From Stylophora pistillata (taxonomy: Eukaryota), in NCBI RefSeq assembly GCF_002571385.2, contig NW_019217962.1:126904-188892 (forward strand): a stretch of 61,989 bases of DNA, in the 5' to 3' direction. Position 1 is the first letter of the stretch; each line of letters opens with the position of its first letter. The translations under genes were made by a program, and so were the position numbers. Under the pieces are notes generated by a model. It saw nothing but the letters and a program-made list of their open reading frames with translations. It searched no databases and was not told the origin of the DNA. This document shows, piece after piece, positions 39,401 to 61,390 of this stretch.

Positions 39401-40472
39401 TTTATTCCGTGCCAAGAACAGTGTGGTACTGAGTCGTTTCCCCAGTGAGTGTTGTTATTCCACTTGTGACCAGCTGTTAGATTATAAATCTCCATAAGCA
39501 CATTTCGTTCTTGCTGGGGTGAAAATGATCTGTATAATGTGATATTGGGTATCAAAATCTCACTTGTACATCTGTAGGCAATAGCCTTATCGATATTCGT
39601 TGGTCTAAGTTTTTCTGGCACAACTGAAAAACAAATCAAATGAGTTATTGACGGGTTTTAGTTTGACCTGCTTAAAGCGGCCTTCTAAGAATCAAAATAC
39701 TTAAAAAATGAAAGTGTCGGATGTGAGATTGCATATAAACTCAACCAAAGGTTTAATGACTGTGAATTAATATGTGGGTCTGAAAATACGTATTTATAAG
39801 ATGAAACTTGTCCGATATAACTAATCTAGCGATGGGATCATATTAAAATTCATCGAAACGCTCCACTGTCAAGAAATACAACTATTCTTCATATATGGAG
39901 ATGAGATTTGCATATCAAAACTGTTTCTTGATTTGCTCAAAGTCTTTATATTTTCGCTTTCATTCCGGAAACCAAAATGAAATGAATTACCGACAAGGCG
40001 AAAAGATTTTATGCTCCGCATGGCAGATAATACCATCAGAAGTTAATTTTTTCCATGAAATTTCCAAGAGCAAAAGAAACGGATTTACAAATATTATGAT
40101 GTCGATATTTCAGCGTTAAGTGATTTTGATTGATATATTTTGCTCTTGTGCAGTTTTCGTTTTGGCCAGAATAAATTCAGCGGTGTAAGTGTACATTCCA
40201 GCTAGGCAGTTGAAGGAAGCGATTCAAAAAGAATTCAAAAGCTCTTCAGAGAAACCTAAATACGAACTAATGTAAACCGTACAAGCACACTCACCTCTAC
40301 TTTCTCTGTCCTCTTCACAGAACGAGTCATCTCGATAAGAAATATACTTTCCCCATTTAAATTCGTCTGGTTCCAGAAGCTGGTATCCTTTACAATTAAC
40401 ATATAAACTGATAAGGATGAATTCTGTCATGATAGCCCACCGAAAACAGCACCTCAGCGAGGATTTCAGCAT
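36460..40472 (-). CDS. LRR receptor 1: signal peptide, plant-type LRR ectodomain, Cys-rich region, ~10-TM domain; 2 exons, ~1113 aa
   Basis: Exon 1 is 40295-40472 (MLKSSLRCCFRWAIMTEFILISLYVNCKG...ESR, phase-1 donor G|gtgagt). Exon 2 is 36460-39623, after the acceptor tgtttttcag. It has the cap motif WGNDSVPHCSWHGIKCD, repeats of LxxLxLxxNxLxGxIP, a Cys-rich stalk and many hydrophobic segments. Confidence 0.88.
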
Positions 40473-43400
40473 CGCAATTGTATCTATCGATCTCTGCGTT
40501 TGTATCTATTAGAGTGTCGGATTTCACTAAAAACAGATTATATCGGGTAATGTTTCAGCTAAACTAAAATGAAAATCGAGTAGGGTACTTAGAGAAGCAA
40601 AAACTACTTATATTGTTACCAAAAAATACTGCTAGTCTCCTTCAGGCGATGAGATCAACTGAGTACGCGTTACCTACGTGCTGTTGTGCTGAGCTGTGAT
40701 TAGATGGAATCCCCGACTGTGATTGGCGCATCTTTCGGATCAGGTTCCCTCTGCAGACCGCGGCCGCACGGCTCTCCAGCTCTCCCAGACCTCTGGAATT
40801 TCACTTCAACTCTGCCAGGATTGTTAATGTTGTTAGGGTGAAGTCTTATATGAGTTTCCTCTTTCACCCTGTGTGTATAAAAATGGGGATCACAATCAAC
40901 AAACTTTACTTCGTTCCAGGGCGGGCAGTGTCCGGTGTTGTGGGGATAGTCTGAGACGATGCAGGTCTTTGTCTTAGCGAATGGGATATCCCTGTAGTGA
41001 TCCTTGATTCTCTCTTGCCTAGGTCTGCCAGTTTAGCCGATGTAAACCTTTCCACACTCAATAAGAATCCTGTATACTACGCCACCCTGTTTAGCCAACA
41101 GGGTAGACGGCATCCTTTAGGTGTACTAGATGTGACTGTAGCGTAGCCCCTGACTTGAAAATAGCGCATATGCCTTGTTGTTGTAGAAAGCGGCGAAATT
41201 GTTCGGAGAGGCCTTTGACGTAGGGCAGGACCTCAGTGGATCTGAACTCGGTAGGGGGTTCAGGGCTAGCGGTCGGTGTCTTAGTTTTGGTTACCCTCTG
41301 CACGAAGAAGGAAAGACAACCATTAGAAACAAGAACGGAAGACAGATGTTCCTTCTCCGGCATTGTAGATAACCGAGAGTTTTATTTCGAGATGTTTCGT
41401 GCGCTCGTAAAGGCATTTGACAATAGCGCGCTTTACCAATTGCGGATGGCGAGAATCATAGGCTAGGTATTGGTCAGTGTGTGTCGGCTTCCTGTAGACG
41501 TCGGTGGTAAGGCGTCAAACGGGTTCTCTTGTAACTGCGGAGTCGAGGAAGGCGAGTTTGTTGTTTCTTTCCGTCTCCATAGCGAAGCGAATGAAGGGCT
41601 ATTGGTGGTTTAAATGTTGTGGGAAGCTTTCTAAACTGTTATGGGCCAAGATGGTATAGGTGTCGTCTAGGAAGCGTTTATAGATACTGGGTTTGTAGGG
41701 TGATGATGTTACTGTTTGTTCTTCAAAACTCTTCATGTAGGTTAGCGATGACAGCGGAAACCGGGCTGTCTACAGCTGCGCCCTCTGTCTGCTCGTAAAT
41801 TGATCCATTGTACTCGAAGTACCTAGATCTCAATACGAAATTTAGGAGGTCGGTGATCTGACTAGGTGCTAGTGTCGTGCGGTTAGACAGGCTGGGATCG
41901 TTTTCCAGTTTCTGCCGAGCTGCCTGTACAGCTTCGTCGATCGGAACGTTGGTAAACAACGCTTCAACGTCGATGGGCACCGTGATCTCGTTTTCTGAGT
42001 TGGGCACTGTAAACTTTGAAGCAAAACGGATATCTGATAGTGAAAACATTGAATCGTCGTGCCAAACTATGCTGAGGGTTATGGTGAGTCAGTCAGCGGC
42101 GTTCGCTGTTGTTGTTTTCATCAGGAGACAGGAAGCCACAGGATGACACTCTAACCTTCAAGAATTCAACATGAACACTAAGTGCTTGAAACGAAGAGGA
42201 TATCTATCCGAGGCCGTCTACAACAAGATCGGACCAAAAAACAAACAGCCGCCTAGAATGTACGGTTTACCGAGGATTCTTAAAGCCAGTATACCTCTGA
42301 GACCAATTGTGTCATGCGTGAACACCTTCGTATATGAGTTGTCCACTTAGTCTAGCTAACATCTTATCTCCACTAACAGGTGACTCAGAATTTACAGAAA
42401 GACGAGCAGTATGCAGTCGAAACGTCGCGATCCGCATCCCAAGTGACCATTTCGTGGGACAAACGATTAAATCTCTTCAAAGTTTTGTTTACCACGATGA
42501 ATAACCACAACATATATTATGATATTGTTATTCCTTTCGCAGTGCACGTAGCACAAGGAAAACATGAGTCCTTTACTCAGGGCCCGCGCAGTAAGGTCTG
42601 AGTATGTGTGTTTAAGCGAGAAGGGGGATGCACAAGTTTCAGCCAACAAAGCAGCGGGATGCGGGCATGCTTAGCAGGACAAGTTTCTTTCAAAAATGTA
42701 CGGGGGGACTAATCATAAAGCCCCTTGCCTAGCCCTTTCCTCTCCGTAGTCCCTGTCACTATAAATCAAACCCCAGACCCACAGCTTCTGAGCGTTTGAT
42801 TGGTTGAAAGACATTTATTATTTCTAAACGAAAAATGAGCACAATAACACGTACCCCTCCTTTGCTAAAATTACAAGCTCTTCAGTGAGTGAGAAAACGT
42901 TTCGTTGATACATCAATGCCTTGTTTCGCTTATTTTCTTCATGATCTCAGAAAACTGAATTTCTAACTGAGGTTCTCTTTAGTTCCCCACGTTTTACGCT
43001 AAAAAAGGGGCTTCCTGTTCACGGCGTTTCCAATTGATGGCAGTGTCCCGAGTTTGTCAACAGTCAGGTGGTATCATACAGACTCTCGTTAAATTTTATT
43101 TCGCAGCCATCTTGGACCATCTTTCGTAAGATTCTTGCAATGTTTCGCGTATCGTCAATCCCACAGTGCGGCCGCCCTTCAAATTTCAAACCAAGGTTAT
43201 TGACCATGTCTTCAAGAGTCCCATTTTTCATTTTGTAAAAATTTCTGTACAATTTTCTCAGATTAATCCACTTTCTGGCGTACTTGGGTATAAGAATGGA
43301 GCAGAGTTGGCACTGTTCCGAGAAGAACCGCTTCATATCATGAGGGCTACATTCGGAAAATAAAGAAAGGAATTACTATAAAACCTCTGGTAGCCCCACT

Positions 43401-44105
43401 TTCTCATAGGCCCCTCCCACTAATAATCTGCGGTCTTGAATGAGCCCACTGTTTTAATCCACCCCTAACTCAGACCAAAAACTTCGGGGTCGTTTATGGC
43501 CTAAGAAATCCATCGTGAGTTCGTAAGCTCAACGTCTACAAGGTCTGCAAATTCATTACTCTATTTCTGCCTGGGCGAGACACCATCACGGCGTCTCTCT
43601 CTACCTTGTAGTATATACGAGTACCTGTCACTGGGGTAACAACTCAGTTTTTCCGAAACTCAGTGCAGGGAGTGGAAGAAACGTGTGCGAGAAGTAAACT
43701 CACCCATCAGTAACAACAGCAAATTTATATTCTGATCCAAGTTCATGTTTGTTAAGCCATTGGTGAAAGTTGTCAAGGACTCCTGGGAATGTATCAGCAT
43801 TATCCACCGTTTCCTACCCAGCAAAAGAAAGTAAGTAAAAGTTATTAAGGCCTACATTATAGACAATCCAGTCATCTGAAAGGAGATGACATAAAATACT
43901 AATCAAGCCATGGACTCTTGACAATACATTCAAAACTACAGTCACAAGTCTAACTGTCAGGGACCTCAGAGGGGATGAGGCTGGTAGGGCCATAGCCCCT
44001 CCCCCCCCCCACCCCAATCAGATCTTGAGAATTAGAGGGTCAACTGAGGTAACACACTAAAACAACTGTCTTAATCTGAACAAAATTCTAAACATTGACT
44101 CATTT
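40182..44105 (+). repeat. Segmental duplication copy A (paralogous to ~57668-61805)
   Basis: Colinear similarity runs from ggtgtaagtg..cagctaggcagttgaa through receptor-1 exon 1, the Penelope relic, ERI1 exons 5 and 4, and into ERI1 intron 3 (actgaggtaacac..aaaacaactgtctt). Confidence 0.9.
40630..42470 (-). mobile_element. Decayed Penelope-like element (RT and GIY-YIG on -, with an inverted 5' RT segment on +)
   Basis: Minus-strand remnants DVEALFTNVPIDEA, GAAVDSPVSAVIANL and GVVYRI..CGKVYIG. Plus-strand YGLPRILKASIPLRPIVSCVNT at ~42260-42330. Pseudo-LTR/hammerhead remnant gcagtcGAAACGTCgcgat at ~42414-42432. Confidence 0.82.
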
Positions 44106-47100
44106 CCATGTATACTGAAAAAGAGTGATTAAAACTACGCTTGGGCACTCAAATGTTTCCCACCAGCTACTTTTAGTAAATACTGGTTACTAAGCCCAGA
44201 AGGATCATATAGCAGGGTCAGAGCTACTAGACTAATTTTTTTTTTCTGTAATAGTTTATTTATTCCATCTAACAGAGCATTCTACAATATAATTAATTCT
44301 ATGGTCCAGAGAAAAATTAGTGTAAAAATATAAATTCACTGTGGAAACTAATTTAATATACACTAGGAAAGAAACATTTTGATTGATATTAAGTTTTTTT
44401 TTTACCTTAGAAGATTCTCAATGTTTAATATCTCTTCACTATCACATGCTTTAGAAAACACATTTTGCTGGTATAAGTAATATTTTTCTAATAATAAACT
44501 CAAACTAGACTCATAATGCTTAAAGAACCATTTAAAAAATAAATTCCATGTTGCAGCGCATCTGTTCATTATTACAAGTACAGTGAAACCTCGATTTAAT
44601 GAAGTGCTAAGGGACTGGGTTAATTGGTTTGTTATATTGAGGGTTTATTATATCGAGGTTCTGTGGCATACATTTTACGGTAACTTTAGCCAGGCTGAAA
44701 CTGAAGTATACTTCGTTATACTGAAGACTTTGTTATATAGATCGAGGTTCATTAAATTGAGGTTCCACTTTACACGTACAGTAGATCAAAGATGACCTGA
44801 AAGCATGGTATGAACAAAGAAGGTGGCACATGAGGTGCAGCTGAGTGTTTCACTGATGTTCTTACTACTGAGTCTCCTGTGATTTGTTTATGAACAGAAC
44901 CACAGCAACATGAAATCTGTTTGTTTTATGTAATAAAGATGCAAAAAGTTGATAATGGTGACATCATGGGTTTTTCCTCCAATAGTAAGTAAGAACCAAT
45001 AATGTAGAATTCAGCTTATTATCTAAACAAAAATCAGAGCACAAGACTGGTTACCAGGACTCTAGTGATAGAGATTAAAGAAATTACTCATGGACATGAG
45101 TAATGAATAATAATGTTGTTAATATTTTGACTTTTGTTACCTGAGTAACTCCAGTTAGGTTCTGACAGAACTGTGATAGTTCTGGCTTATCTTGTGGTTT
45201 GCAGTACTCGTGAAATTCAGACACCTGAAGAGATAATTTTATGTCAAACTGGTGTAAGACCTGTCCTGAATACAAACAATAGCTAACATAGCGTGTTGAA
45301 ATGCATTTCAAAGATCAGCGGGGAGGATCAAGGGATCTCTTGTTAAAAACACTAATTGAAAGTATCAATCATTAGCCCCAAATGTCAAATTTGGTTGAGT
45401 TACCATTAGGTTTGTTCACATGACTTGAATGTTTAAAACATTTCTGATGGTGGCCCACATTTTCTTTTATCTGAAATACAGAGTATAACTGAATGCCAAG
45501 GCCAATTCCTTTTAGACTCCCAATTAGCCCTCTTGAGGGGAGGTAATCTGACTAGAGAATGAGTAGAACTATACATGGTGAAAGGCTGCTGGTCAAATGT
45601 AGCCAAGTGGTATTGGGCACTGGTCTTGTTACAGGTGGTGATCCCAAGTTGAGGCCCTCCACTCTACTACTCACTGGTCAGATTTGTCCTCATTTGCTTC
45701 AAGTTCAATTCATTGGGTATACTTTGTACACTGTACTTCGCCACTTGGGATTTCCTAACACTTTAAGCTTAATATGTTTATTTACAATATTCATTTGTTT
45801 TCATTTATGGCCTACATGTATATGAAAATTACTTCGTGCAAATCTGGTTCACCCCAGTAAAATACAGTGTATTCTTATCAGTTTTTTTCACTCAAGCAGC
45901 AGATCACAATAACAAGGATGGAAAATGCAAAATCTTCAACTTTCAACATGAGTTCTAGTACCTTTTTCTTGTAACAGAAATCACTAAAATATATTTGATC
46001 TTGGAAGGTAATACCTCTCTAACCAAAAAGATTGCCACAGCAAAAAATTCAAAAGCAAGGCTTCCCCATCAACCCTATCCTATTCCCCTGGAGACGATTT
46101 GTTTAAACAAAAGTCACTGTGATAGATGTTTTCTTTCAGGCAAGAAATAATTTTCAGCAGTACCAAAGCAATTTCCAAAATTGTCAACATTAAGACCCTA
46201 CAGAGTTTTCATACTACACTTTATGTTGCTAAGAGGCCATAAAGAGAAAAACTCCAGGATTAAGCAGCCACTACTCAACATAGTTAATGCCTGCGAGAAA
46301 CTGCAAATTTTTGGATGCTTTCTAAATGTTGCATTCTAAAATAAATTAGCATTGAAATATTTTATTTTCAAACTTCTTGGATTTGTGTTTCTAAGTCCAA
46401 GGATGCCAGAAATAAAGGCAAAAAAAAAACAATTCAAACTACAATAGTTTAAAATCATTTTGATCACAAACTGCAGACATTACATTTCAATTACAATGTA
46501 TATGTTACTTTAATTTAATGAACAATACACATGTCGTTTTAATACCCCCTGAAAATTAAGGAGAGTTGGCAAATAGATGTTCTTGCAAAGCTTACAAACC
46601 TTTTCCAGTGTAACTGCATCCAAAAGTACTGCAGGGAACTCAATTATCTCATGGATGTAGCCGTTTGGATTATTCTCCTCGCACGTTCCTTCAAAATCTA
46701 TGACACAGTAGAAATGAACCTCGTTTGTTCTCTTTTCTTGTACCAGCTTAGCTTGAGCCAGCTTCTCTTTTTTTATGTGATTTTTTAGACGCTTTCGGAG
46801 AACTTCCTTTACCCCTCTACAAAATGAATCAGAATTGTTAGATTCTCAAACTTAAGCCTCTTCTTCGCAGATGAAAGTGGGGCATCTACATGTAGTAGAT
46901 AAAAATATACAACTGCAGGAAGGATATTTGTCTTATCTTCGATCAATAATTTTATTACAGTGTGTGGAAAGTACATCATCTCTCTCTATGAGATATTGAT
47001 GGTCTCTGAATTTTGCGTTATTTGGCGAGGCAGAGCTTTGACTACGTTTTAATGCCTTCCTAATCCTTCCCTTATCCCCATTCTCTTATCCGTTAGTCAG

Positions 47101-47345
47101 GCTTAGAACAGCGCCGTTGAACCGAGTTTGTTTGAGTTAATTTCAGGTCAAATATTTCATTGCACTCACCGTGAATCCAGCCCACGCTCTTTCAGTTCTC
47201 TCTTGACTTCATCCTTTTTCATTTTATTTATTTTTCCGTTTGAAAATGATATTTCCCTGAACACTGGATGATCATTGAGGGGAGCTTTCCTGTTCTCCGT
47301 ACTTTCATTTTCACTCCCAACTACATCAAGAAATCCTTCCGCCAT
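43064..47345 (-). CDS. ERI1: 3'-5' exoribonuclease 1 (SAP + DEDDh), copy 1; 5 exons, ~289 aa
   Basis: Exons 47170-47345, 46600-46816, 45141-45224, 43704-43813 and 43064-43346, all GT-AG with consistent phases. SAP region HPVFREISFSNGKINKMKKDEVKRELKERGLDSRGVKEVLRKRLK. Catalytic motifs VIDFEGTCE, HEIIEFPAV, TDGPHDM and HCGIDDTRNIARI. Confidence 0.9.
44581..44770. mobile_element. Tc1/pogo-like MITE in ERI1 intron 3
   Basis: ta-CAGTGAAACCTCGATTTAATGAA...TTCATTAAATTGAGGTTCCACT inverted termini. Confidence 0.65.
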
Positions 47346-47438
47346 TTTTTGCTTGTTTTCAAATTAACCGCTGATCGCATTGTCTTTCGGTCGCGTAAAA
47401 CCAGGCCTCTTCCGGTTTCCTTCTTGAGGAAGAGAATT
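47346..47438. promoter_or_regulatory. Putative compact bidirectional promoter between ERI1 (-) and LRR receptor 2 (+)
   Basis: 93 bp separate the divergent ATGs (47345 and 47439). The segment is CpG-containing, with an ETS-type CCGGAAG on the minus strand (47409-47415) and a YY1-like AAAATGGCGG overlapping the ERI1 start. Confidence 0.6.
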
Positions 47439-50400
47439 ATGGCTCTAACTCTTGTATCAAAATATTCCCTTCTACCCGTAGTGTTCAGGATCGTGGTGCT
47501 CCTCGTTTGCTTCGAACATAACCGATCTCTTAGGTTCGGAGGAAGCTTGTCAAACTATGGATCAAGGTCACTCTACTACAGAACAAGGCGGAACAAACCA
47601 GACATCGGAGGTAAGTGCGAGCCAGTAGAAAAGCATAGTCGACTCATAACAGGCAGTGTCGTACCACACTTGATACACACTTTTTTGTTTACTACTACTG
47701 ATAAAACAACGAACAGGGTTGTTTTTCTTTTTTTCTGCCAAGTATTCTTTGAGACTAGAATAGTGGGGCTGTGGTGCTGGGGGTTTATCGGGCGCTCAAA
47801 ACTTTCAGACCAGCTACCAAGGCGTAAAGTCACACTCTTCCGAGAAATTCCATTTCCACGATTTTCGTGAAAATCGGTAGAACTGGATTACTTGAATCAT
47901 ATAGTTCAGGTTACTTCAGAAGCAGTACATGTATGTAACCAATACACGTTGTAATTTGGTAATATCAACTAAGCTGAAATTGTAAATTGGCCACCGTAAA
48001 GAGTTAAGAGGCTGTCTCTCTTATTTCCACCCGGTCAATTTCGCGTCAAAAATAATTTTGCCTGAAACTCTGTCAACAGAAAGACTTTACTTAAGAAAGA
48101 ACTAAATTAGATTTGAATAAAGGCTGATAGTTTCAAAAGAAACTGTTTGGCACTGCGTCGCAGGGGGTAACGAAATAATTTGAATATATCAACAAAGTTG
48201 AAATGGTAAGTGTGATGTGCGATCCTCGCAGTAGATAGCGCTATTTATGCAATAGCGAAAATCAGACCTGAAAAAAATCAGGCCTGTACGGGACTCGAAC
48301 CACTGACCTCTGCGATACTAGTGCAGCGCTCTACCAATTGAGCTAACAAGCCAACTGGGAGCAGGCCGTTAAGTTGATTCGTAATAAACCCGTGAAAGTG
48401 ATAAATGAGATGCAATGAATATATGAAGTTCATATATTTTGAACTGCGGTATTAGATACGTATGATGCACGATCCTCGCAGTAGATAGCGCTATTTATGC
48501 AATAGCGAAAATCAGACCTGAAAAAAATCAGGCCTGTACGGGACTCGAACCACTGACCTCTGCGATACTAGTGCAGCGCTCTACCAATTGAGCTAACAAG
48601 CCAACTGGGAGCAGGCCGTTAAGTTGATTCGTAATAAACCCGTGAAAGTGATAAATGAGATGCAATGAATATATGAAGTTCATATATTTTGAACTGCGGT
48701 ATTAGATACGTATGATGTGCGATCCTCGCAGTAGATAGCGCTATTTATGCAATAGCGAAAATCAGACCTGAAAAAAATCAGGCCTGTACGGGACTCGAAC
48801 CACTGACCTCTGCGATACTAGTGCAGCGCTCTACCAATTGAGCTAACAAGCCAACTGGGAGCAGGCCGTTAAGTTGATTCGTAATAAACCCGTGAAAGTG
48901 ATAAATGAGATGCAATGAATATATGAAGTTCATATATTTTGAACTGCGGTATTAGATACGTATGATGTGCGATCCTCGCAGTAGATAGCGCTATTTATGC
49001 AATAGCGAAAATCAGACCTGAAAAAAATCAGGCCTGTACGGGACTCGAACCACTGACCTCTGCGATACTAGTGCAGCGCTCTACCAATTGAGCTAACAAG
49101 CCAACTGGGAGCAGGCCGTTAAGTTGATTCGTAATAAACCCGTGAAAGTGATAAATGAGATGCAATGAATATATNAAATTATAGAATCTACGCTTAACAT
49201 AGACGTCAACTGCTACGCCAACGACACGAACGCTAGATTGTTTGAGCGGTTGTTAAAGTTTCAGCGAGCAACTGAGAAAGTAGAAGCTAAAAACTGAACT
49301 GAAACTCTTTATTCGCACTATTTCAAGAGGTTACTACAGATTATAAAAGTCAGAATATATAAGAAACAGTAAATTACATCAATAATCAAAAGGAAATACA
49401 AGACGCCTTTCAATCTAGGCCAAGGGCTAAACGCTTGCTTCGACCTACAGATGGAGATCAGGAGGAAAAAAGCGCGTGCTTGCCGTCAACAAACCGGGCG
49501 AAGCTTCGAGAACACTGCAATTTAGGTCGGCCAACGTCTCCTACACTACTTGTACTTCTTCATTTGCCAGTCCGCTGCTAGCTGGAGCGAACCCGATTAG
49601 TTATGTTCGTGGCTTCTTATCACCGGTACAGGAAATCGGCCCGAATTATCGAGTGTTTCCGCACGTTGGTACAACGCAACAACAATAACAATAATATGAC
49701 CACTTTCATCGGTAACATGGTCAAACACGAGCGGGAGTGCTTGATATATTAACGATTTCCCGGATCCTGTAGGCAACTTAACAAAAACATCTTCTTTCTC
49801 GACTAAAACTTTTTTAATTGCAAGCTTCTGGTGAGCTTTAAGCTCGAAAATTTTGAACTTTGACGACGCTTTGCGAAAAGCTCCTTCAAGCACCGCCATT
49901 TGTCTTGTGTTTTCCACATGAGGATCGCGATAGAAAACGATATCTGATTGGACGAGTCTCAAAAGGTGAGTCTGGCGCGAAAAGGTTCCTGAAAATGGAA
50001 CCCGAGCTGTGATTGGCCAATTCGGAGAAAGGAATGTAGTGCGGTTGTCAGCAGCCGTTCTTTTGGGGGAGCGTTGCGTGACATCCAAAAAAAACGGCTG
50101 CGAGGGAGACTACATAGTTAAGCCACCGAATTTATATCAGATTGCTTAAAAACCTTTCTAGTTTGCCAAGAAAGTTAGAATTTGCCCTCTCAATATATTT
50201 GAAGAGGCGAATTTTAGCATATTTTGACCACTATAAGTCGCCATCGGCCGATGGCCGTAAATAACCTTTATTTAGACGTTAAGTTTTGGGATTTGGGACC
50301 TGGTTGATAACTCTATCCTACACAGCCGTTAAGTTTACACCTTTATAGGCAAAAACATGTACGTTTCCGATTTCAAAAGTTATGACCATTTCAGAATCAG

Positions 50401-53400
50401 CACATGCACGAACATTCGCGATATTTTCATCTACACTAAAATCGAAACACTGGAGCAGATTTCGTTATAAATACAGCTTACCTTCGGCGCATCTTGGTTT
50501 TATGTGAAATTTCAGATGTTCCTTGCTCTCCAAATTGGTGAACTTAATGATAACTCCAGCTAATAACTCCAACTTCAGCGGTCGGCATCTATCGACACTC
50601 TTCTTTAACTGGTTGTTGCGAAGTACTGTTGAAACTTTGGATCGCTGCTGCATTCTCTTCAAGAATCAGTCATATCACTCCACAAGTCTATATGCCGAAG
50701 TTTGGGGGCTAAAATTTGGAATTTAAAGCTGAACGATAGCACTATGGAACACAGCCGTCGTTCCGTTTTCACAGAGGTCCGCATTAACCATTGCCGGTGA
50801 ACCTGCTGGCACTTTATTTTTTCTGGAAGGCCTGTAAGTGTAGTATGGCATGCAAGTGCTTTTTCTAAAGAAGAATAGCGTCAGTCTGTAGCGAGTTTTC
50901 AGCGAGGTTGAAAAAGCTCTCAGAATGTAGAGGTGACATCAATGATCATCTACAAGCATGTCCTTTAGGTCAGCTTAGAGGAAAGGTACAAGAATATGAG
51001 CTTATCGTTAACAGGTCAGGGTTGCCACACGACCTTTCCCCTTATCAAGTTGAAGAACTCTGGATCTGCGAAAAGCGTTGAGGAAACATGGGTAAAAACT
51101 GGCGACCATGTCGCACTTGCCAGTACCCGCTGCACAACGGCCGGAAAAAGCAGCTAAATACTAGAAATGTAGTTCATCTCGACATGTCAAGGGAAGTTAA
51201 TACTATCTTTGCACAACTCGTTCCAACAGGTTCCGTATGATTTCTATGTAAATTCTAGCTTACCAATCAGGTATTGTCCTGAAATGTGGAGCACGGTTTA
51301 AATTAAGATAAGATCTAGACATATATTGAGGTGCGGTAAATGTCAGAATTCAGTATTTTGGAATTTGATTAACATTTGGGCCAAAGCTCGTACGCAAGTG
51401 AGTATAAAACAAAACAAAAGTCAAGAATCCTTTCCTGCAAAAATTCTATCTGAGGTCAGATGAAGCCGGTTGCTGTCGCAACAGCTCCATAGTAACAGCT
51501 GTGAGAGATGTCGCAAAAGGAGTTGGGGTTGAAGTTCATAGTTATCACTACTCGGAGCCGCAGTCTGGTGAAGACATTTGTAATCGTATCCTCTGCCCTA
51601 TGAGGTCCTCTATTCGTGCTTACTTGAACGAAGGGCACGATGTTCTAACTGTCGTGGACATGAGAGATGCATTAACGCAACACCCAATGAAGGGAACAAC
51701 CGCTGCAGTTAGCATAGTCAACGAATCAAAAAAGACTGTATAAATAACATTGAGCATTTTAGTAGCTTCCAGAACTTCGAATATGGAGATACCGGTCTGA
51801 GAGTTTGGAGATGTTATGGCATCGGTAAAGGGAAGTACATTCCATATGACGTGATTGATATCAAGCACCAAGGTCAAACGTCCCTTCAAGCCATAGAATC
51901 TCCAGGCTTTTATGATCCTCCTGAAAAGCATGTGGTCAAGCATGGTTCAAAGGAGAGCAAGGAAACAGAGAGTACAACGCATTGTTTGAATGCTCTGTGC
52001 TTGGATGTGTTGAAGTGATCGAAACGTTTTCGCAACTAGAGCTGCACCTGGACGTTGGAAAGCATACAGTCAGCAGGTTAAGCGAGTATGATGCAATCAA
52101 AATGGACTGAGCCCTTAAGTTCTCGTCGATAGTTACCGCTGGTATCGAGTGTTCGAGCTGTTCGTCAGATTCCAGTACGCCACTCACTTCTCCCGGGGTT
52201 ACTTCGCGCACTCGCCTCTACGAACAGGATGGGCCGTAGGCAAACCGAGGGTCAGTGTTAGATTTTCAAAGAATGTAAAAGAATACCTAACGGCACGGTT
52301 TACACTTGGAGAAAGAAATGGGCGGAAGGCAGACCCCGACCAAGTTGCAGTGGACATGCGAAATGCGAAAAATGAGTCAAAGACACGTTTGTTCACTGGA
52401 GAACAGTGGCTGACAAAGAGCCAAGTTCAGCGCTTTTTCTCCCGGCTAGCAGCAATGCGACGCAAAGATCAGAGTGTGATCGGGATTTTACTGGACGGGG
52501 AGACACGTATGACCTCTGTGAACGTTACCACAGTAACACACTTCAGAAATTGCATGTGGTTTTGTTGAGAGCCATCTGTAGTCATTTTGAGATCTCTATA
52601 AAATTGAGAGACATAAAGCAGATCCTCGTAGACAAACTGTCGGACGTGATTAGTGACTGTCAATGTGTTCACAGTAGAATTATGTAGAACATGTCTTATA
52701 CAGTTGCTGAAAGTGTAGAATATGCTCTACAGATACAAACTGCCTTTAGTTCCTATATCATTGAAGTTCTGAAGGCGTTGTCAATGTAATACTCAAAGCT
52801 TATAATATCTCTGACATTAAATTCTGTCGTGCTTTACGCACTTAGAATTCATAACTAAATCAGTGAAAGATAGAACCTAGTTTGACGACATGTCAAGCAG
52901 TATCTGATACACGATATAGGCATCGCACTGAGCCTTGCTCCTCATGTCAAAATTATTTAAGTAGTTTGATTTTAGTTTAGGTGAAAAAATTGCGAATGCC
53001 GGTGCATGTGCTGATTCAAACGGTCATAACTTTTGAAAAAATGAAAACGTACAGGGGTTTTTGCATACTTTTGCTTACAAAGGTCTAAACTTAACAGCTG
53101 TGTAGGATAGAGTTGTCAACCAGGTCCCAAATCCCAAAACTTAACGTCTAAATAAAGGTTATTTACGGCCATCGGCCGATGGCGACTTATAGTGGTCAGA
53201 ATATGCTAAAATTCGCCTTTTTAAATATATCGGGAGGGCAATTTCTAACTTTCTTGGCAAACTAGAAAGGTTTTTAAGCAATCTGTTATAAATTCGGTGC
53301 TTAACTATGCGAATCAAATATTTTACAATGTTACAAAATATGGCTATTTTCAATTTTCGAGACGTTGCGACGGTCCCCACGGACTGGGAAATAATTATGG

Positions 53401-56400
53401 CCCCTAACGCAGTCAGAAAATTATTTCGAATCAAACCAAATCTAATTTAGTTCTTTCCTAAGTGAAGTCTTTCTGTTGACAGAGTTTCAGGCAAAATTAT
53501 TTTTGACGCGAAATTGACCGGGTGGAAATAAGAGAGACAGCCTCTTAAGAAGTTGACGTTTCGAGCGTTAGCCCTTCGTCAGAGCGAATACACGTTGTAC
53601 TTTGAATCTCATTTCCCTTTCGAACGTTCCTAACCTTTTTACTCTTTGATTATGATCGGCCGGGAATCGAAGCGAAAACATGGATCATGAAATGATGTTT
53701 AAACCCGAGAACCTTGATTTACGAGTTATAGTCGATTGTGAATATCAAAAACAGGGCCATAGAAGGCAAGATCACGAAGCTCGATGGTCAAATGATTACG
53801 CTCCTGGCACCCCCGATTATAAAGCGAAATCATGGATCATGAAATGATGTTTAAACCCTAGAACCTTGATTTGCGAGTTATAGTTTTGTGAAGTCAGTTG
53901 TGAATATAAAAAACTGGGCCATAAAAAGCAGGATCACAAAACTCGAAGGTCAAATGACTCTGCTACTGGCACCCTCTATTATGATGTGGCTCAATGAATG
54001 AGGTCAGGAAAAATCCCTGAGGGTGTAGAGAAGCAGAATCCTTGCTGAATTTCATCTGTAATTACTTATTGTTGTCTTCTTTCCTTGTTTGTTGTACTTT
54101 TTTACTAGCTTTGAAGACAGAAAAACTGATACCTCTGAACTACGATGAAACTTTTGCCTATGGATGTTTGCACGATATCCCGATACCAAATAGTACTTTG
54201 GAAACAACATTCACGCCCCAACAAGAGAGAGCTGTACTTATGGAAATATTCAACCAAACAGCTGGTCACAGTTGGAGAAATAATGCTCACTGGGCCAACA
54301 ATTCAGTTCCACACTGCCTTTGGTATGGAATTACATGCGATCAAACCAATAGCTACATTATCAGTATCACTCTGATAGAAAATAATTTGGATGGAACCCT
54401 TCCAAAAAGTTTGTGGAAGCTTCGTAATTTGCAGGGTTTGTGTATAGGTAACAATGACAGGCTTTCAGGCAATCTTATTGAAATTTTGTCTGCCAATATG
54501 ACAACCTTGCTTCGTCTTGATCTTGCTTTTAATAAGTTGTCTGGTAAGATTCCTGGTGACATCTTACCTAAAATGGAGTCTTTGGTAAAAGTTCAACTTT
54601 GCTGCCAATTGGGAAAGGGCCTGTCTGGTGAAATTCCAAGAGACATTGGGAACTTGACTGAACTGCAAGTTCTCAGTCTTGGAGAAAACAGATTGAATGG
54701 CATGATTCCAAAGAGCATTGCCAAATTGAAAAAGCTCTGGTTTTTGGATCTTGAAAGTGTCAAATTTCTAAATGGAGGATTTGAAAACATGTACAATCTT
54801 TCATCTCTACGTTATATGCATCTCTCTCTTGCTGGGCTAAAGGGAACTTTGCCAGACGAATTTGGACTTTACTTTCCTGCTATGATTGAGTGTCTCTTGC
54901 CAGGAAATCTTTTCACCGGAGGCATTCCCTCAACAATGGGCAACATGACAAACTTGTGGCATTTGAACTTGGCGAACAACGATTTTTCTGGAAAAATACC
55001 AAAAGACTTAGGCTCAATACCCATGCTTCAAGTTGCTGATTTCAGCAGGAATCAGTTATCGGGGTTACAAGAAGGAATTGTTTTCAAGTCAAAATCCCTA
55101 GAAGTACTGAATTTGGCTGGTAATAAACAACTTAATATGACATTCAACAGCCTGTTAGAAGCAATGGAACCCGTAAATCAATCGTTGCGTATTCTTAACA
55201 TAAGCGAGTGCAATTTTCTCGGAAAAATCTCCCCAAAACTGTGGGACTTTCAAAATTTAATTTCTGTAGATTTAAGTGGTAATAGCTTGTTTGGACAGCT
55301 TCCATCTCCCCCAGATAATATGTTATTTCTACTTAATCTTGACGTCTCAGCGAACAACCTTTCAGGACAAATTCCGCAAGAATTTGCAAAACTCTTAGCG
55401 CTGGAAGTGTTCGACATATCACTGAATCCCAACATGCATGAATCCAACGAGGAAAGTGGAACTGTACCCAACTTCGTGACGGTTGATTTTAAAACTTTGA
55501 CGAAACGAAATTCAGATGATAAATTCAGGTGTCCCAATGCTCGGCTCAGTTACAACAAAGGACTTGTCGTGTTAGACCCAAATTACTATTTCTACCGCCT
55601 GTGCCTTTGCGACATTGGATACTTTGGCTCAGGAAGAACTTGTTTACCTTGTATGGAAGGAGGAGTGTGTCACGATCAAATGCTTCCTACGCAGTCAATG
55701 ATCATTAAAGAGGGATATTGGCCTTCATCTCTTCATAAAAACGTGACTCACCTGGTGAGATGTTCGCAAGCTTTGGGCACCAGTCCCCACGTAAATACAA
55801 CATGCAATCCAACAGGCGCTTGTGAATGTGAGATTGATCCTGATTGGCTTAAGGAAACGAATGGTGCAATTGACAGGCCATCCATTACTTGTGACAAGTC
55901 GTGCCTTTGTCAGAAAGGTAGTCGAGATAGGTTTTGCTCCCTTTGTGAACATGATTATTACAAACAAGGAATACTTTGTTACGCCTGTCGCAAAAGTGAA
56001 GCCAGTGTCTACATCATAGTCGTACTTTTAATTCTTACCATCCTGTTTATTATCCTTGGGTTTTTCTTTTACAAAAAGAAACGACTTCTTTCTGTTACTT
56101 TTGTCTTCTCTCAAATAATCATTTTGACCATTTTAGCGATGCTTCAAATCATTCCACCCTGGCTCCTCGAACTCAACATAATAGCTCTTTTTATTGGTTT
56201 AGCCGGAAGAGGAAAGACTGCAAGAGGAATTATGAAGACAACCGTGTTTTATTTCCAAACTTTTGATGCCTTATTGTCCAACAATGACGTTTGGCCAGTT
56301 GAAGTTTTGGAGATGCAGCGATACATTGGAAATGTTTTCAACTTTCGTTTCTCTGGCCTGGCTTGTGAGTTTCCGAGCTTGTTTACGCCTCTCGGCGAGC

Positions 56401-57296
56401 TTGCATCTCTTTTGATTCTTCCTCTCATTTGCATCTTGCTTGTTTGGTTGTATTTTATCCTTGGTTGCCTAGCCTTGAAAATTTTTGAACCTCACAATTC
56501 AGAAGAAAGACGATTTCGACTTCGGAATACCTGTTTACAACTCTCGATCATGACCCTTAACTTTACTTACTTTCCCATTGTGAAAAAAACAGCGTCTATC
56601 CTAGCGCATTGTGGTGAGGATAATGGCCAGCGTTATTTGAGAGAGGCACCGTGGATGGAGTGTGAAGGCAGTGACTACACCGTCCTACAGGTGCTAGGCT
56701 GGCTTGCTCTGCCGCTGTATGTGATCGGTGTGCCTTTTGGAGTGTTCCTTCCTCTCCTGCGCTTCAATAACCTAGCCAGAAGACATGGGCTGCCCCAACA
56801 AGACCAAGAAAGTTTGGACAGTTGGCTCGGTTCAATCTATTTGCCATATAAGGAAGAGTTCCGTTCCTTTTTCGAGATCATCTTTCTTCTTAGGCGGATG
56901 CTGATCGCTTTCGCGTTGTCCCTCATCACTCGTGCATCGTCCTTTCAGACGATAGCTGTTTGCTTTGTTTTGCTAAGCGCCCTGTGCTTACAGTTGTCCT
57001 TAAGGCCGTTCAACGATTCTTACAAAAATTTCCCATTGGAAAACACAGCAGAGACGTTGGTTCTCTTGACCCTTCACTTTTCTTTCATGAACGTAAGGTA
57101 CGCGTCTCTGAACCCTGACTCATCTACACCCATTGTTTGGATGATTGTAGTGGTCAACGCGGTTCTAATTTGCGGAATGGTTGTTTCGATAATTTTGTTG
57201 TTGAAAAAGGCGGAAAATGCAGATGGAGGGCATGAAGAACGTGCACCAGTCCTAGGAAACGGCGCTGGAGAACAATATGGAACTTTTGAGGAGTAA
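47439..57296 (+). CDS. LRR receptor 2: signal peptide, plant-type LRR ectodomain, Cys-rich region, ~10-TM domain; 2 exons, ~1119 aa
   Basis: Exon 1 is 47439-47610 (MALTLVSKYSLLPVVFRIVVLLVCFEHNRS...RTRRNKPDIG, phase-1 donor G|gtaagt). Exon 2 is 54109-57296, after a long polypyrimidine tract ending tttactag (phase 1). Exon 2 is clearly paralogous to receptor 1 and is certain; the exon-1 link is inferred. Confidence 0.85.
48212..49175 (-). repeat. Tandem array of near-identical 250-bp units, each carrying a tRNA-Thr(AGT)-like sequence and an oligo-T tract; ends at an N
   Basis: gatcctcgca recurs at 48221, 48471, 48721 and 48971. tRNA-like segments on the minus strand at 48280-48352, 48530-48602, 48780-48852 and 49030-49102. 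Confidence 0.92.
48280..48352 (-). pseudogene. tRNA-Thr(AGT)-like sequence (pseudo-tRNA or SINE head); three further copies at +250, +500 and +750
   Basis: GGCTTGT/ACAGGCC acceptor stem with T discriminator, D arm GCTC..GAGC, anticodon loop CTAGTAT, B box GGTTCGAGTCC. The T stem has two mismatches and the anticodon stem has an A-C pair. Followed by ga then T7. Confidence 0.7.
49600..50112 (-). mobile_element. AcademH-like transposon end with RecQ-type helicase fragment, nested in the left Sola3 TIR
   Basis: Terminus TAGTCTCCCTCGCAGCCG at 50112 (-). ORF LKAHQKLAIKKVLVEKEDVFVKLPTGSGKSLIYQALP carries RecQ-like Q motif and Walker A. Confidence 0.65.
53552..53585 (-). ncRNA. Minimal type I hammerhead ribozyme motif with intact CUGACGA/GAAAC-GUC core
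   Basis: Reverse complement reads gctCTGACGAagggctaacgctcGAAACGTCaac. Stem I is weakened relative to the 14141 copy. Confidence 0.6.
53671..53975. repeat. Two-copy tandem duplication (~150 bp) near the 3' end of the receptor-2 intron
   Basis: aagcgaaa.catggatcatgaaatgatgtttaaaccc.agaaccttgattt...ctggcaccc begins at ~53671 and again at ~53822. Confidence 0.8.
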
Positions 57297-57713
57297 TTGA
57301 ATAATACAAAACGTTAATTCAAGTTCAATACTGATCCTTAACAACTGTTTCCATAAAAACAATATTTATCTAGTTTCTGTCAAATGATAGGATGGACATT
57401 ACGTGGCCGTGTGCATGGATACGAACGCAATTTTGTCACACTTGGTTGACTTAGCAATATTGTTGTTAAAGCATGTTAAAGACGTAGAGCATGTTCATGA
57501 AGATATGTTTTAGGAGAGGGATAAATTCTGATATTTCATTAACATCCTAGTAACAAAATATTAAACTGTAATTTTAAACAAAAATATTAAACAAAAATTT
57601 TTGGGGGGATTACTTTCTTGAGGAGTTTAGAAACCAAGCTCAAGCTAGTCAAGTACCCTGGTAAGTCGGTGTAAGTGCATACCAGCTAGGCAGTTGAATA
57701 CAAGAATACTCAC

Positions 57714-60636: not shown

Positions 60637-61390
60637 TTAGGTGTTATCATTCATATTCTCGTTAAATTTTATTTCGCAGCCATCCTCGACCATCTTTTGT
60701 AAGGCTCTTGCAACATTTCGTGCATCGTCTATCCCACAGTGCAGCCGCCCTTCAAATTTCAAACCAAGTTTCTTGACCATGTCTTTAAGAGTCCCCTCTT
60801 TCACTTTGTAAATATTTCTGTACAATTTTCTTAGATTAATCCACTTTCTGGCGTACTCGGGTATAGGAATGGAGCAGAGTTCGCACTGCTTCGAGAAGAA
60901 ACGCTTCTTATCGTCAGGGCTAGATTCGGAAAAAACGAAGAAAGGAATTGCTATAAAACCTCTGGTAGCCCCCCTTTCTCGTTAGCCCCCCCCCCCCCTT
61001 ATAATCTACGGTCTTGAATGAGCCCACTCTTTTAGTCCTTCCGTCACTCAAACCAAAAACTGTAGTGTCGTTTGTCGTTTAAGCAATCCATCGTGAGTTT
61101 GTAAGCCCAACGTCTGCAACCTCTGCATATTCATCAATCTATTTCTGCCTGGGCGAGACACCATCACGGTGTCTCTCTCAGCCCTGTAGTATATACGGGT
61201 ACCTGTCACTCTGGTTATAATTAAAGTTTTAGAAACTCAGCACAGGAAGGGGAAGAAACATGTACGAGAAGTAAACTCACCCATCAGTAACAACAGCAAA
61301 TTTATATTTCGATCCAAGTTTATGTTTTTCAAGCCATTGGTGAAAGTTGTCAAGGACTCCTCGGAATGTATCAGCAGTATCCACCATTTC
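60637..61390 (-). CDS. ERI1: ERI1-like copy 2, last two coding exons (gene continues beyond the window)
   Basis: Exons 61281-61390 (EMVDTADTFRGVLDNFHQWL...VVTDG) and 60637-60919 (PDDKKRFF...FEGRLHCGIDDARNVARALQKMVEDG...*). Lengths (110 and 283 nt) and splice sites match copy 1, and the frame is open. Confidence 0.85.

What the first reader, a model, noticed from the sequence alone, without database searches (positions are those of the whole stretch)
47170..47610. ERI1 and LRR receptor 2 are head-to-head with start codons 93 bp apart: a possible sensor-nuclease module
Seen: ERI1 ATG at 47345 (-) and a signal-peptide exon ATG at 47439 (+), whose phase-1 gtaagt donor matches the phase-1 acceptor of the receptor body 6.5 kb away. 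The spacer holds ETS-like and YY1-like motifs, and no TE interrupts it despite heavy insertion nearby. Established: such motifs mark bidirectional promoters, and head-to-head sensor/partner pairs occur in plant immunity. Inference: co-transcription of a pattern-recognition-like receptor and an RNA-silencing modulator, or capture of a housekeeping promoter by the receptor.
Basis: partly seen in the sequence, partly recalled or inferred. Interest (0 to 1): 0.75.

Follow-up and report, generated by a model that had tools for sequence, protein, structure and literature searches.

The report
Shared divergent promoter: ERI1 and LRR receptor
In the coral Stylophora pistillata an ERI1 RNA-exonuclease gene and a leucine-rich-repeat membrane-receptor gene start back to back, 93 bases apart, an arrangement also found in other stony corals; it looks like an ordinary shared two-way promoter rather than a proven sensor-nuclease machine.

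Summary
ERI1's ATG is at 47345 (-). The receptor's first-exon ATG is at 47439 (+), 93 nt away. The donor at 47610 and the acceptor at 54109 are both phase 1.

The public RefSeq protein XP_022792682.1 uses exactly this join. RNA contigs from 3 studies leave the genome exactly at 47610. The junction letters themselves were not seen.

Most of the 6.5-kb intron is a later transposon insertion. The tandem copy R3 has a 706-nt intron.

The pair is conserved. On all 5 coral metagenome contigs that carry receptor exon 1 with upstream DNA, an ERI1 start lies 113-125 nt away on the other strand. The same sequence blocks recur there.

After duplication one partner decays and the spacer stays:
- S. pistillata ERI1b has a stop, a lost donor and a frameshift.
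- L009 keeps only an ERI1 relic.
- In L017 the receptor is the broken one.

Best reading: an old, compact bidirectional promoter with interleaved 5' ends. A functional sensor-nuclease module is untested and gains no specific support. This is a new member of a known kind, of modest interest.

The parts
47170..47345 (-). ERI1a exon 1 coding part (ATG at 47345; 58 codons + 2 nt; second half is SAP-like)
   Evidence: Pfam SAP E 6e-4, 19.8 bits, below the 23.9 cut-off. Exon 1-exon 2 joint 47170/46816 seen in 4 of 4 runs.
46600..46816 (-). ERI1a exon 2 (start of the exonuclease domain, ...VIDFEGTC...)
   Evidence: Joints in 4 of 4 runs, set to GT..AG. Best solved-structure match is human ERI1, E 9e-18.
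45141..45224 (-). ERI1a exon 3
   Evidence: Joints in 4 of 4 runs, GT..AG-adjusted.
43704..43813 (-). ERI1a exon 4
   Evidence: Joints in 4 of 4 runs, GT..AG-adjusted.
43064..43346 (-). ERI1a exon 5 coding part including the stop. RNA contigs run on to at least 42802 (3' UTR).
   Evidence: Pfam RNase_T E 6.9e-9. PDB ERI1 E 3e-28 against ERI2 3e-13 and ERI3 3e-12. Contig pieces.
47346..47438 (.). 93-nt spacer between the two start codons: shared promoter and overlapping 5' UTR region
   Evidence: 88 of 93 identical to the tandem copy, against 74-88% in the flanks; 47350-47399 is 50 of 50. One RNA contig (X1 record 6) runs unbroken through it. CpG observed/expected 1.4 against 0.85 window-wide.
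47339..47348 (-). AAAATGGCGG block (YY1-like; also the Kozak context and start codon of ERI1)
   Evidence: Single match in the window, 0.14 expected. TTCCGCCAT is invariant in 6 of 6 aligned spacers.
47366..47373 (+). AACCGCTG block, conserved, factor unknown
   Evidence: ACCGCTG is invariant in 6 of 6 spacers. The composite CCGCCAT..ACCGCTG occurs once per relevant locus and nowhere else in the window or the 24 loci.
47409..47415 (-). CCGGAAG, ETS-like site
   Evidence: A CCGGAA core is present in 5 of 6 aligned spacers; L009 has CCTGAAAT.
47439..47610 (+). Receptor R2 exon 1 (57 codons + 1 nt; hydrophobic, signal-peptide-like N-terminus), donor G|GTAAGT
   Evidence: Identical to residues 1-57 of XP_022792682.1. 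RNA contigs in 4 of 4 runs, with the fit ending at 47610. 66% identical to the Pocillopora verrucosa N-terminus.
47611..54108 (+). R2 intron 1 (6498 nt), inflated by nested repeats
   Evidence: The R3 counterpart is 706 nt. Window 47958-53587 has no counterpart in the duplicate.
48004..53548 (.). 5.5-kb element with 112-nt inverted ends (98%) and TTAA at both borders, inserted inside a small high-copy repeat (about 47951-48003 and 53549-53590)
   Evidence: Depth in the thousands and loose ends at 47951-48008. A helicase-like ORF lies inside.
54109..57296 (+). R2 exon 2: whole mature protein (LRRNT_2 + LRRs, Cys-rich region, multi-pass membrane domain) including the stop
   Evidence: 100% identical to XP_022792682.1.
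60640..61384 (-). Last two exons of ERI1b, the tandem copy (60640-60918 and 61283-61384). Its other exons and R3 lie beyond the window end.
   Evidence: ERI1b carries an in-frame stop, a lost exon-1 donor and a 7-nt insertion in exon 3.
36463..40472 (-). Older paralogue R1: body 36463-39657 and its own exon 1 within 40296-40472. It lies tail-on to ERI1a and is not head-to-head with an ERI1.
   Evidence: No copy of the spacer lies upstream of it.

Best explanation
The 93 nt between the two start codons is a compact two-way (bidirectional) promoter. It is probably TATA-less, though no scan for eukaryotic core-promoter elements was run. It drives ERI1a leftwards and the LRR/multi-pass membrane receptor R2 rightwards. 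ERI1a is the only intact ERI1-type 3'-5' exoribonuclease copy found in this genome.

The two 5' UTRs are written on opposite strands of the same ~100 nt and most likely overlap. Each gene's core promoter therefore sits in the other's first exon or UTR.

Because the control elements are interleaved, the pair cannot easily be separated. It has stayed together in stony corals and is copied as a unit by tandem duplication. After duplication the surplus partner is free to decay, while the spacer is kept for the surviving gene.

Shown here: the gene structures, transcription of both first exons, use of the 47610 donor, the duplication, conservation of the arrangement and of spacer blocks, and the decay of partners.

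Inferred: that one shared set of elements drives both genes, that the 5' UTRs overlap, and that the ETS-like site is functional.
For: 1. Gene models.
- ERI1a's four introns are seen as GT..AG joints in 4 of 4 RNA runs from 3 studies.
- Its exons match human ERI1 best among solved structures.
- R2 exon 1 is covered by contigs in 4 of 4 runs. The fit ends exactly at 47610 and is followed by 3430 (X1), 2707 (X3) and 52 (X14) further letters. 3430 equals the 3188-nt body plus about 242 nt.
- RefSeq XP_022792682.1 equals exon 1 + Ala + body.
- For R3, both the RefSeq and the authors' model (XP_022792735.1 / PFX24349.1) have the same architecture.

2. Transcription of the spacer.
- X1 record 6 (4116 nt) runs unbroken from 47170 to 47610. 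It links ERI1 exons 2-1, the spacer and R2 exon 1.
- ERI1 intron bins show zero depth in all 4 runs, so DNA carry-over is low.
- In a related coral, the spliced transcript L019 has a receptor 5' UTR that reaches to 16 nt from the ERI1 ATG of L004.

3. Duplication.
- The whole unit is duplicated in tandem. Unit A is 42001-57573. Unit B runs from 59487 to past the window end.
- In unit B the gap between start codons is 91 nt.
- The spacer is 94.6% identical between copies, against 74-88% for the adjacent exons and introns.

4. Other corals.
- Of 21 metagenome loci, 5 carry receptor exon 1 with upstream DNA: L004, L023 (same sequence as L004), L014, L017 and L009.
- All 5 have an ERI1 start on the opposite strand, 113-125 nt away.
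- They share the blocks TTCCGCCAT and ACCGCTG.
- A quick tree puts L014 on the Acropora/Montipora side (SH-aLRT 97) and the others with the robust corals.

5. Independent decay of partners.
- ERI1b has a TAA at codon 38, its exon-1 donor changed from GT to AA, a 33-nt deletion and a 7-nt insertion. R3 stays open over 1093 aa.
- L009 keeps the spacer and about 10 ERI1 codons only.
- In L017 the receptor has frame breaks while ERI1 exons 1-2 are open.

6. Literature.
- GABPA/ETS and YY1 motifs are reported as enriched in human bidirectional promoters (PMC3082894, passages read).
Against: - No transcription start site was mapped. All runs were assembled contigs, which are unstranded and give no ends or expression levels.
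- The contig through the spacer was seen in 1 of 4 runs. In the other three, the receptor contigs start at 47432, 47438 and 47458, and the ERI1 contigs stop at 47319-47335. So overlap of the UTRs is likely but not proven.
- The junction letters 47610|54109 were not seen.
- The authors' own GenBank model of R2 (PFX24333.1) uses a different first exon at 53680-53736. I could not test that exon with reads.
- The YY1-like block overlaps the ERI1 start codon and first codons. Its conservation may be coding or Kozak constraint (compare PMC4773876).
- The species of the metagenome contigs are unknown. The tree is the quick one, because the careful search was not finished. Raw identities do not place L014 clearly.
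- Higher spacer identity between copies A and B could also come from local gene conversion. The receptor body plus about 280-nt flanks is 93% identical between the copies.
Confidence: 0.72

Rival explanations
1. A true functional module. The receptor senses an external cue and ERI1, co-induced from the shared promoter, tunes small-RNA or RNA-decay responses. Selection on joint regulation is then what keeps the pair together.
For: - The arrangement and spacer blocks are conserved in 5 of 5 informative coral loci and in both S. pistillata copies.
- Both first exons are present in poly(A) RNA contigs of all 4 runs.
- Head-to-head pairs are said to tend towards similar expression (PMC7817982, abstract only, listing).
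Against: - No expression correlation, interaction or phenotype was tested.
- Either partner decays after duplication while the other and the spacer persist.
- R1 is an open paralogue with no ERI1 head-to-head.
- The receptor has no known immune signalling domain.
- ERI1 is a single-copy housekeeping-type enzyme here.
Confidence: 0.1
2. Plain adjacency. Two independent core promoters happen to lie back to back in a gene-dense spot. Nothing is shared, and the pair persists only because breaks in a 100-nt interval are rare.
For: - Many animal genes are head-to-head within 1 kb: about 10% in human (PMC3082894, abstract) and about a third in a sponge (PMC4773876, passages).
- In 3 of 4 runs the contigs of the two genes do not meet.
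Against: - The spacer is the best-conserved part of the duplicated unit near the starts.
- It keeps invariant non-coding blocks across corals whose flanking exon-1 peptides are only 59-80% identical.
- The spacer is retained beside an ERI1 pseudogene and beside an ERI1 relic.
Confidence: 0.12
3. 47439-47610 is not the receptor's true first exon. It would be a promoter-upstream antisense transcript of ERI1, wrongly joined to the receptor in the RefSeq model.
For: - The authors' GenBank model PFX24333.1 starts at another exon, 53680-53736.
- The junction letters were not seen in reads.
Against: - Contigs leave the genome exactly at the GTAAGT donor and continue for up to 3430 letters, the size of the body plus a 3' UTR.
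- The exon peptide is conserved in R3 (77%) and in Pocillopora verrucosa (66%). It is homologous to N-terminal signal-like exons of other corals.
- A spliced transcript of a related coral (L019) joins the homologous exon to the body at the same phase-1 point.
- The rival exon at 53680 has a stop in its two sister copies, at 53832 and in R3's intron.
Confidence: 0.04

Closest known systems
Metazoan bidirectional promoters / head-to-head gene pairs (start sites within 1 kb)
   Same: - Divergent orientation.
- 93 nt between the start codons, with both genes transcribed.
- An ETS/GABPA-like site and a YY1-like site, the motif classes reported as enriched in human bidirectional promoters (PMC3082894).
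- The arrangement is conserved across species.
   Different: - The interval is extremely short, so the 5' UTRs probably overlap.
- One partner is a member of an expanding receptor family, not a second housekeeping gene.
- The promoter is retained after pseudogenisation of either partner.
Conserved microsynteny caused by interleaved regulatory elements (recalled concept, e.g. Irimia et al. 2012; not read here)
   Same: Two unrelated genes stay adjacent over long evolutionary time, plausibly because their control sequences cannot be separated.
   Different: Here the constraint would be a shared core promoter or overlapping UTR of about 100 nt, not distal enhancers lying in a bystander gene.
Plant head-to-head NLR sensor/helper pairs (e.g. 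RGA4/RGA5, RRS1/RPS4; recalled)
   Same: Head-to-head orientation with a short shared upstream region. One partner carries LRRs.
   Different: Neither coral gene is an NLR. There is no NB-ARC or TIR domain, no integrated decoy and no evidence of physical interaction. The likeness is one of layout only.
ERI1 / 3'hExo (human, solved structures 1W0H, 1ZBH, 4L8R)
   Same: An N-terminal SAP-like segment and a DEDDh-type RNase_T exonuclease domain. The best matches among solved structures are ERI1, well ahead of ERI2 and ERI3.
   Different: 289 codons against 349 residues in the human chain 1ZBU_A. The SAP match is below Pfam's cut-off. No activity was tested.

Membership tests
Bidirectional promoter gene pair | Two genes on opposite strands, transcribed away from each other | tested here: met
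   ERI1a is on the minus strand and R2 on the plus strand. Splice joints and exon phases fix the strands.
Bidirectional promoter gene pair | Transcription start sites less than 1 kb apart (definition as in the abstracts of PMC3082894 and PMC7817982) | tested here: met
   The start codons are 93 nt apart and there is no intron between them. One contig covers 47170-47610 unbroken. The start sites must therefore lie within a few hundred nt of each other. Their exact positions were not mapped.
Bidirectional promoter gene pair | Both genes expressed | tested here: met
   Spliced ERI1a contigs and R2 exon-1 contigs are present in 4 of 4 runs from 3 studies.
Bidirectional promoter gene pair | One shared element set drives both directions; the genes are co-expressed | not testable with these tools
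   Only assembled contigs were available, so there are no expression levels and no strand information. A reporter or CRISPR test is needed.
ERI1 / 3'hExo exoribonuclease | DEDDh (RNase_T) exonuclease domain closest to ERI1 rather than ERI2 or ERI3 | tested here: met
   - Pfam RNase_T E 6.9e-9 on the last exon.
- PDB ERI1 E 3e-28 and 9e-18, against ERI2 3e-13 and 3e-5, and ERI3 3e-12 and 1e-3.
- DxE, D and HxxxxD stretches are visible in the exon translations. The residue roles are recalled.
ERI1 / 3'hExo exoribonuclease | N-terminal SAP domain | tested here: inconclusive
   Pfam SAP E 6e-4, 19.8 bits, against a cut-off of 23.9. Only half of the domain lies in exon 1. Exon 2 aligns to human ERI1 from residue 47 (1ZBH) or 97 (1ZBU).
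Pattern-recognition receptor (TLR-like or plant LRR-RLK/RLP-like) | Extracellular LRR domain behind a signal peptide | tested here: met
   LRRNT_2 (E 8e-4, just under the cut-off) plus LRR_1, LRR_4, LRR_8 and LRR_14. The N-terminus is hydrophobic, but no signal-peptide predictor was run.
Pattern-recognition receptor (TLR-like or plant LRR-RLK/RLP-like) | Single-pass membrane anchor with a TIR or kinase signalling domain, or a known co-receptor | tested here: not met
   - No TIR, kinase or death domain was found.
- The C-terminal 460 residues have no Pfam hit in R2 itself.
- 2 of 11 relatives match PF06011 'TRP', best E 5e-5.
- Atlas feature neighbours carry PF06011 (a lead only).
Plant-type paired NLR sensor/helper | Both partners are NLRs (NB-ARC + LRR) that act as a complex | tested here: not met
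   One partner is an exonuclease and the other a membrane LRR protein. No NB-ARC domain was found.

The most novel reading that the evidence does not exclude
ERI1 and this LRR/TRP-like membrane receptor form an ancient co-regulated unit in stony corals. A surface sensor and a brake on small-RNA pathways would be switched together from one ~100-nt promoter, for example in responses to viruses, foreign RNA or symbionts. That joint control, not mere physical interleaving, would be why the pair has stayed together across the deep split of scleractinians.
Probability: 0.07. Interest if true: 0.7.

Novelty: new member of a known kind. Interest (0 to 1): 0.3.

Why it matters
The finding gives a clean, datable example in a coral of how a two-way promoter ties two unrelated genes together. 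The pair is copied as a unit. Each partner can then die while the about 100-nt control region survives.

It has practical use for annotation:
- It settles which of two conflicting public models of receptor R2 is right.
- It shows that ERI1b is a pseudogene.
- It flags a fused ERI1-R1 gene model (PFX24334.1) as doubtful.

It also offers a very small natural promoter fragment, with three conserved blocks, as a candidate for coral or anemone transgenesis.

It does not, as it stands, reveal a new immune mechanism.

Tried and rejected
- One search failed on a frame slip and was corrected.
- The bacterial promoter/terminator scan of 47100-47700 found nothing and does not apply to a eukaryote.
- Rfam on 46500-48100 gave no RNA family.
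- Neither tblastn nor blastn found a copy of R2 exon 1 or of the spacer upstream of R1. I first took R1's annotated first exon for repeat-derived. One search showed it is homologous to other corals' receptor exon 1, with a relic copy at 57715-57879, so I dropped that idea.
- The C-terminal domain of R2 has no Pfam hit of its own. The TRP-like label rests on 2 of 11 relatives and on Atlas neighbours and is only a lead.
- Oculina locus tags (G005833, G005835, G005839, G005841) hint at interleaved genes. I could not retrieve a full-length ERI1 to look them up, for two reasons: no single exon is long enough for the length window of the search for homologous proteins, and a joined model was not to be searched.
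- The careful tree did not finish in two 300-s runs, so only the quick tree is reported. Rows L013, L018 and L020 were left out of it. L016 and L017 fill under half of the columns.
- Paper searches found nothing on this pair: 'DDB_G0281931' gave 0 papers. The listings for 'ERI1'+'coral', 'bidirectional promoter'+'coral' and 'head-to-head'+'gene pairs'+'Nematostella' held nothing relevant. Supplements are closed and not searched, so expression tables that may list these genes were not seen.
Full report
**What the window is**

The receptor body ORF 54111-57293 is 100% identical to a Stylophora pistillata protein. That protein is RefSeq XP_022792682.1. The window is G000:C179:126904-188892.

**Checking the observation**

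- On the minus strand an exon starts with ATG at 47345. It reads MAEGFLDVVGSENESTENRKAPLNDHPVFREISFSNGKINKMKKDEVKRELKERGLDS and ends at a GTGAGT donor below 47170.
- On the plus strand ATG at 47439 opens 172 nt that end G|GTAAGT at 47610.
- The receptor body begins after ...TTTTTTACTAG| at 54109.
- Both boundaries are phase 1, and the junction codon is GCT.
- The spacer 47346-47438 is 93 nt and the intron is 6498 nt.
- CCGGAAG sits at 47409-47415 (-) and AAAATGGCGG at 47339-47348 (-), the latter across the ERI1 start codon.

**ERI1a**

I laid Logan contigs of four runs on 42101-48100. X1 and X2 are from one study, X14 from a second, and X3 from a third (X3's RNA status is a guess). Four GT..AG introns on the minus strand appeared in 4 of 4 runs.

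After placing the cuts on GT..AG, the coding exons are 47170-47345, 46600-46816, 45141-45224, 43704-43813 and 43064-43346. Together they make 870 nt, or 289 codons plus the stop.

Exon by exon:
- The last exon matches Pfam RNase_T (E 6.9e-9) and human ERI1 structures (E 3e-28). ERI2 and ERI3 are far weaker.
- Exon 2 matches ERI1 at E 9e-18.
- The SAP match in exon 1 is weak, E 6e-4, below the cut-off.

I did not build or search a joined ERI1 or receptor model. The exons were handled apart.

**Receptor R2**

- The body carries LRRNT_2 and LRR families and a Cys-rich stretch.
- Its C-terminal multi-pass region has no Pfam hit of its own.
- 2 of 11 relatives match PF06011 'TRP', and Atlas feature neighbours carry the same family (a lead only).
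- No TIR, kinase, death or NB-ARC domain was found. 'Pattern-recognition-like' therefore describes the ectodomain only.

**Is 47439-47610 spliced to 54109?**

For:
- XP_022792682.1 is exactly exon 1 + Ala + body.
- RNA contigs cover exon 1 in 4 of 4 runs. They stop fitting exactly at 47610, then run on for 3430 (X1), 2707 (X3) and 52 (X14) letters. X2's contig ends there. The figure 3430 equals the 3188-nt body plus about 242 nt.
- The tandem copy R3 has the homologous exon (77% aa), the same GTAAGT donor, a 706-nt intron and the same acceptor. Both RefSeq and the authors' annotation join them (PFX24349.1 / XP_022792735.1).
- Pocillopora verrucosa's protein begins with a 66%-identical peptide.
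- In a related coral, the spliced transcript L019 joins the homologous exon to the body at the same point relative to genomic L004.

Against:
- The junction letters themselves were not seen.
- The authors' model of R2 (PFX24333.1) uses another first exon, at 53680-53736. That exon has a stop in its two sister copies.

I take the join as very likely.

**Why the intron is 6.5 kb**

- 48004-48115 and 53437-53548 are inverted repeats, 98% identical over 112 nt. TTAA lies at both borders.
- This element sits inside a small high-copy repeat (about 47951-48003 and 53549-53590). That repeat's other copies show up as deep contigs and loose ends.
- Window 47958-53587 has no counterpart in the R3 copy.
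- Without it the intron would be 868 nt, against 706 nt in R3.

The distance between the two receptor exons is therefore a recent accident.

**Tandem duplication of the pair**

A self-comparison of the window extended with L001-L003 shows unit A at 42001-57573 repeated as unit B from 59487 to about 9.3 kb beyond the window end.

- In unit B the ERI1b start is at C179:193730 (-) and the R3 start at C179:193822 (+), 91 nt apart.
- The genome holds only these two ERI1 last exons and only these two copies of the spacer.
- Between the copies the spacer is 88 of 93 identical (94.6%), and 47350-47399 is 50 of 50.
- By comparison, ERI1 exon 1 is 83%, ERI1 exon 2 74%, R exon 1 88%, and the neighbouring introns 74-82%.
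- The receptor body with about 280 nt on each side is 93% identical, so gene conversion cannot be excluded.

ERI1b is broken. It has a TAA at codon 38, its exon-1 donor GT changed to AA, a 33-nt deletion in exon 2 and a 7-nt insertion in exon 3. R3 is open over 1093 aa.

**Other corals**

I therefore scanned metagenome contigs with an alignment of 11 family members and obtained 21 loci.

Ten of these have at least 700 nt before the receptor body.

- Five of the ten carry receptor exon 1 with DNA upstream of it: L004, L023, L014, L017 and L009. L023 is 100% identical to L004 over 2595 nt.
- All five have an ERI1 start on the opposite strand.
- Positions (ERI1 ATG / receptor ATG): L004 443 / 557, L017 3984 / 4103, L014 4157 / 4280, L009 664 / 790. 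The gaps are 113, 118, 122 and 125 nt.
- L014 and L017 also hold ERI1 exon 2.
- The other five (L007, L015, L016, L020, L024) are uninformative, not negative. In four of them exon 1 is not on the contig, and in L024 it sits at the very first base.

Aligning the six spacers gives the invariant blocks TTCCGCCAT and ACCGCTG. A CCGGAA core is present in 5 of 6. The composite CCGCCAT..ACCGCTG occurs once in each of these loci and nowhere else in the window or the 24 loci.

A quick maximum-likelihood tree puts L014 with Acropora and Montipora (SH-aLRT 97). It puts the rest with Stylophora, Pocillopora, Oculina and Desmophyllum (SH-aLRT 98). The careful search was not finished, and raw identities do not separate the groups. 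So 'older than the complex/robust split' is provisional.

**Decay of partners elsewhere**

- L009 keeps the spacer and about 10 ERI1-like codons, followed by unrelated sequence and a stop. No SAP-coding part lies in the 663 nt available.
- L017's receptor has a frameshift in exon 1 and at least three in the body. L018, 99.7% identical and from another data set, has the same breaks. ERI1 exons 1-2 in L017 are open.

**How the promoter probably works**

- X1 record 6 runs unbroken from ERI1 exon 2 through exon 1, the spacer and R2 exon 1 into the body.
- Such a contig needs RNA over every 31-mer of the spacer. The intron bins at 46901-47100 and 46101-46500 are empty in all four runs, so DNA carry-over is unlikely.
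- L019's receptor 5' UTR reaches to 16 nt from L004's ERI1 ATG. Its first 93 nt are a 5.8S rRNA chimera.
- The two 5' UTRs therefore most likely overlap on opposite strands.
- In the other three runs the contigs of the two genes do not meet.
- No start site, strand or expression level can be read from contigs.

ETS/GABPA and YY1 motifs are reported as enriched in human bidirectional promoters (PMC3082894, passages read). A YY1-like motif can also simply be the Kozak context (PMC4773876, passages read).

**Verdict**

The best explanation is a compact bidirectional promoter with interleaved 5' ends. It ties a housekeeping-type exonuclease gene to a member of an expanding LRR membrane-protein family.

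The 'sensor-nuclease module' is not refuted, but nothing specific supports it. Independent decay of either partner speaks against an obligate cis-coupled pair.

Head-to-head pairs are common: about 10% of human genes (PMC3082894, abstract) and about a third in a sponge (PMC4773876, passages). The gene model is already public. This is a new member of a known kind, of modest interest.

Noticed in passing
window 60640-61384, and beyond the window end to C179:193730: ERI1b, the tandem copy of ERI1, is a pseudogene in this assembly. It has an in-frame TAA at codon 38, the exon-1 donor GT changed to AA, a 33-nt deletion in exon 2 and a 7-nt insertion in exon 3. Exons 4 and 5 are still open.
   Followed up: yes
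window 36463-47345 (-): The authors' GenBank model PFX24334.1 (1320 aa) fuses ERI1a exons 1-4 to R1 through an exon at 40672-40791 and an internal acceptor in R1's exon 1. RefSeq keeps the two genes apart. None of the four joints printed leaves ERI1 exon 4 for anything but exon 5. The bridging exon lay outside the laid stretch, so read-through is untested.
   Followed up: partly
window 53680-53736 (+): The authors' model of R2 (PFX24333.1) starts at a short exon in a locally duplicated piece of intron 1. The sister copies at 53832-53885 and in R3's intron have a stop. It is probably an ab initio artefact, but it was not tested with reads.
   Followed up: partly
window 47951-53590: Nested insertion in R2 intron 1. 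A 5.5-kb element with 112-nt inverted ends and TTAA at both borders (48004-53548) sits inside a small, very high-copy repeat. Inside the element are four copies of a 250-nt tandem repeat (48207-49180) and a helicase-like ORF (49600-50109, DEAD E 6e-7).
   Followed up: partly
window 57715-57879 (-) and 58200-58319 (-): A relic copy of R1's exon 1 and of the neighbouring piece lies just downstream of R2 (83% DNA identity to 40280-40587). The duplicated unit therefore began inside R1's 5' region: R1 exon 1, Penelope-like element, ERI1, receptor.
   Followed up: partly
window 53830-57573 against the R3 copy: The receptor body plus about 280 nt of non-coding flank on each side is 93% identical between R2 and R3. 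The rest of the duplicated unit is 80-84% identical. This suggests gene conversion or a younger secondary copy of the body.
   Followed up: no
window 40700-42100 and 58187-59114: ORFs with GIY-YIG-like and reverse-transcriptase-like stretches, Penelope-like by eye. They lie between R1 and ERI1a and again between R2 and ERI1b. No family scan was run on them.
   Followed up: no
L019:1-93: The metatranscriptome contig that carries a receptor transcript of a related coral begins with 93 nt of antisense 5.8S rRNA (Rfam RF00002, E 7e-20). This is most likely an assembly chimera.
   Followed up: yes
L017:4103-8056 and L018: In one related coral the receptor next to an open ERI1 has several frameshifts. 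An almost identical contig (99.7%) from another data set has the same frameshifts. This is a receptor pseudogene beside a live ERI1, the mirror image of the S. pistillata unit B.
   Followed up: partly
window 47268-47438 (+): The plus-strand frame of R2 exon 1 stays open back through the spacer to an in-frame ATG at 47268, inside ERI1 exon 1. A transcript starting further upstream could encode a 57-residue N-terminal extension that would bury the signal-like segment. Receptor contigs in 3 of 4 runs start at 47432-47458, which argues against this form.
   Followed up: no
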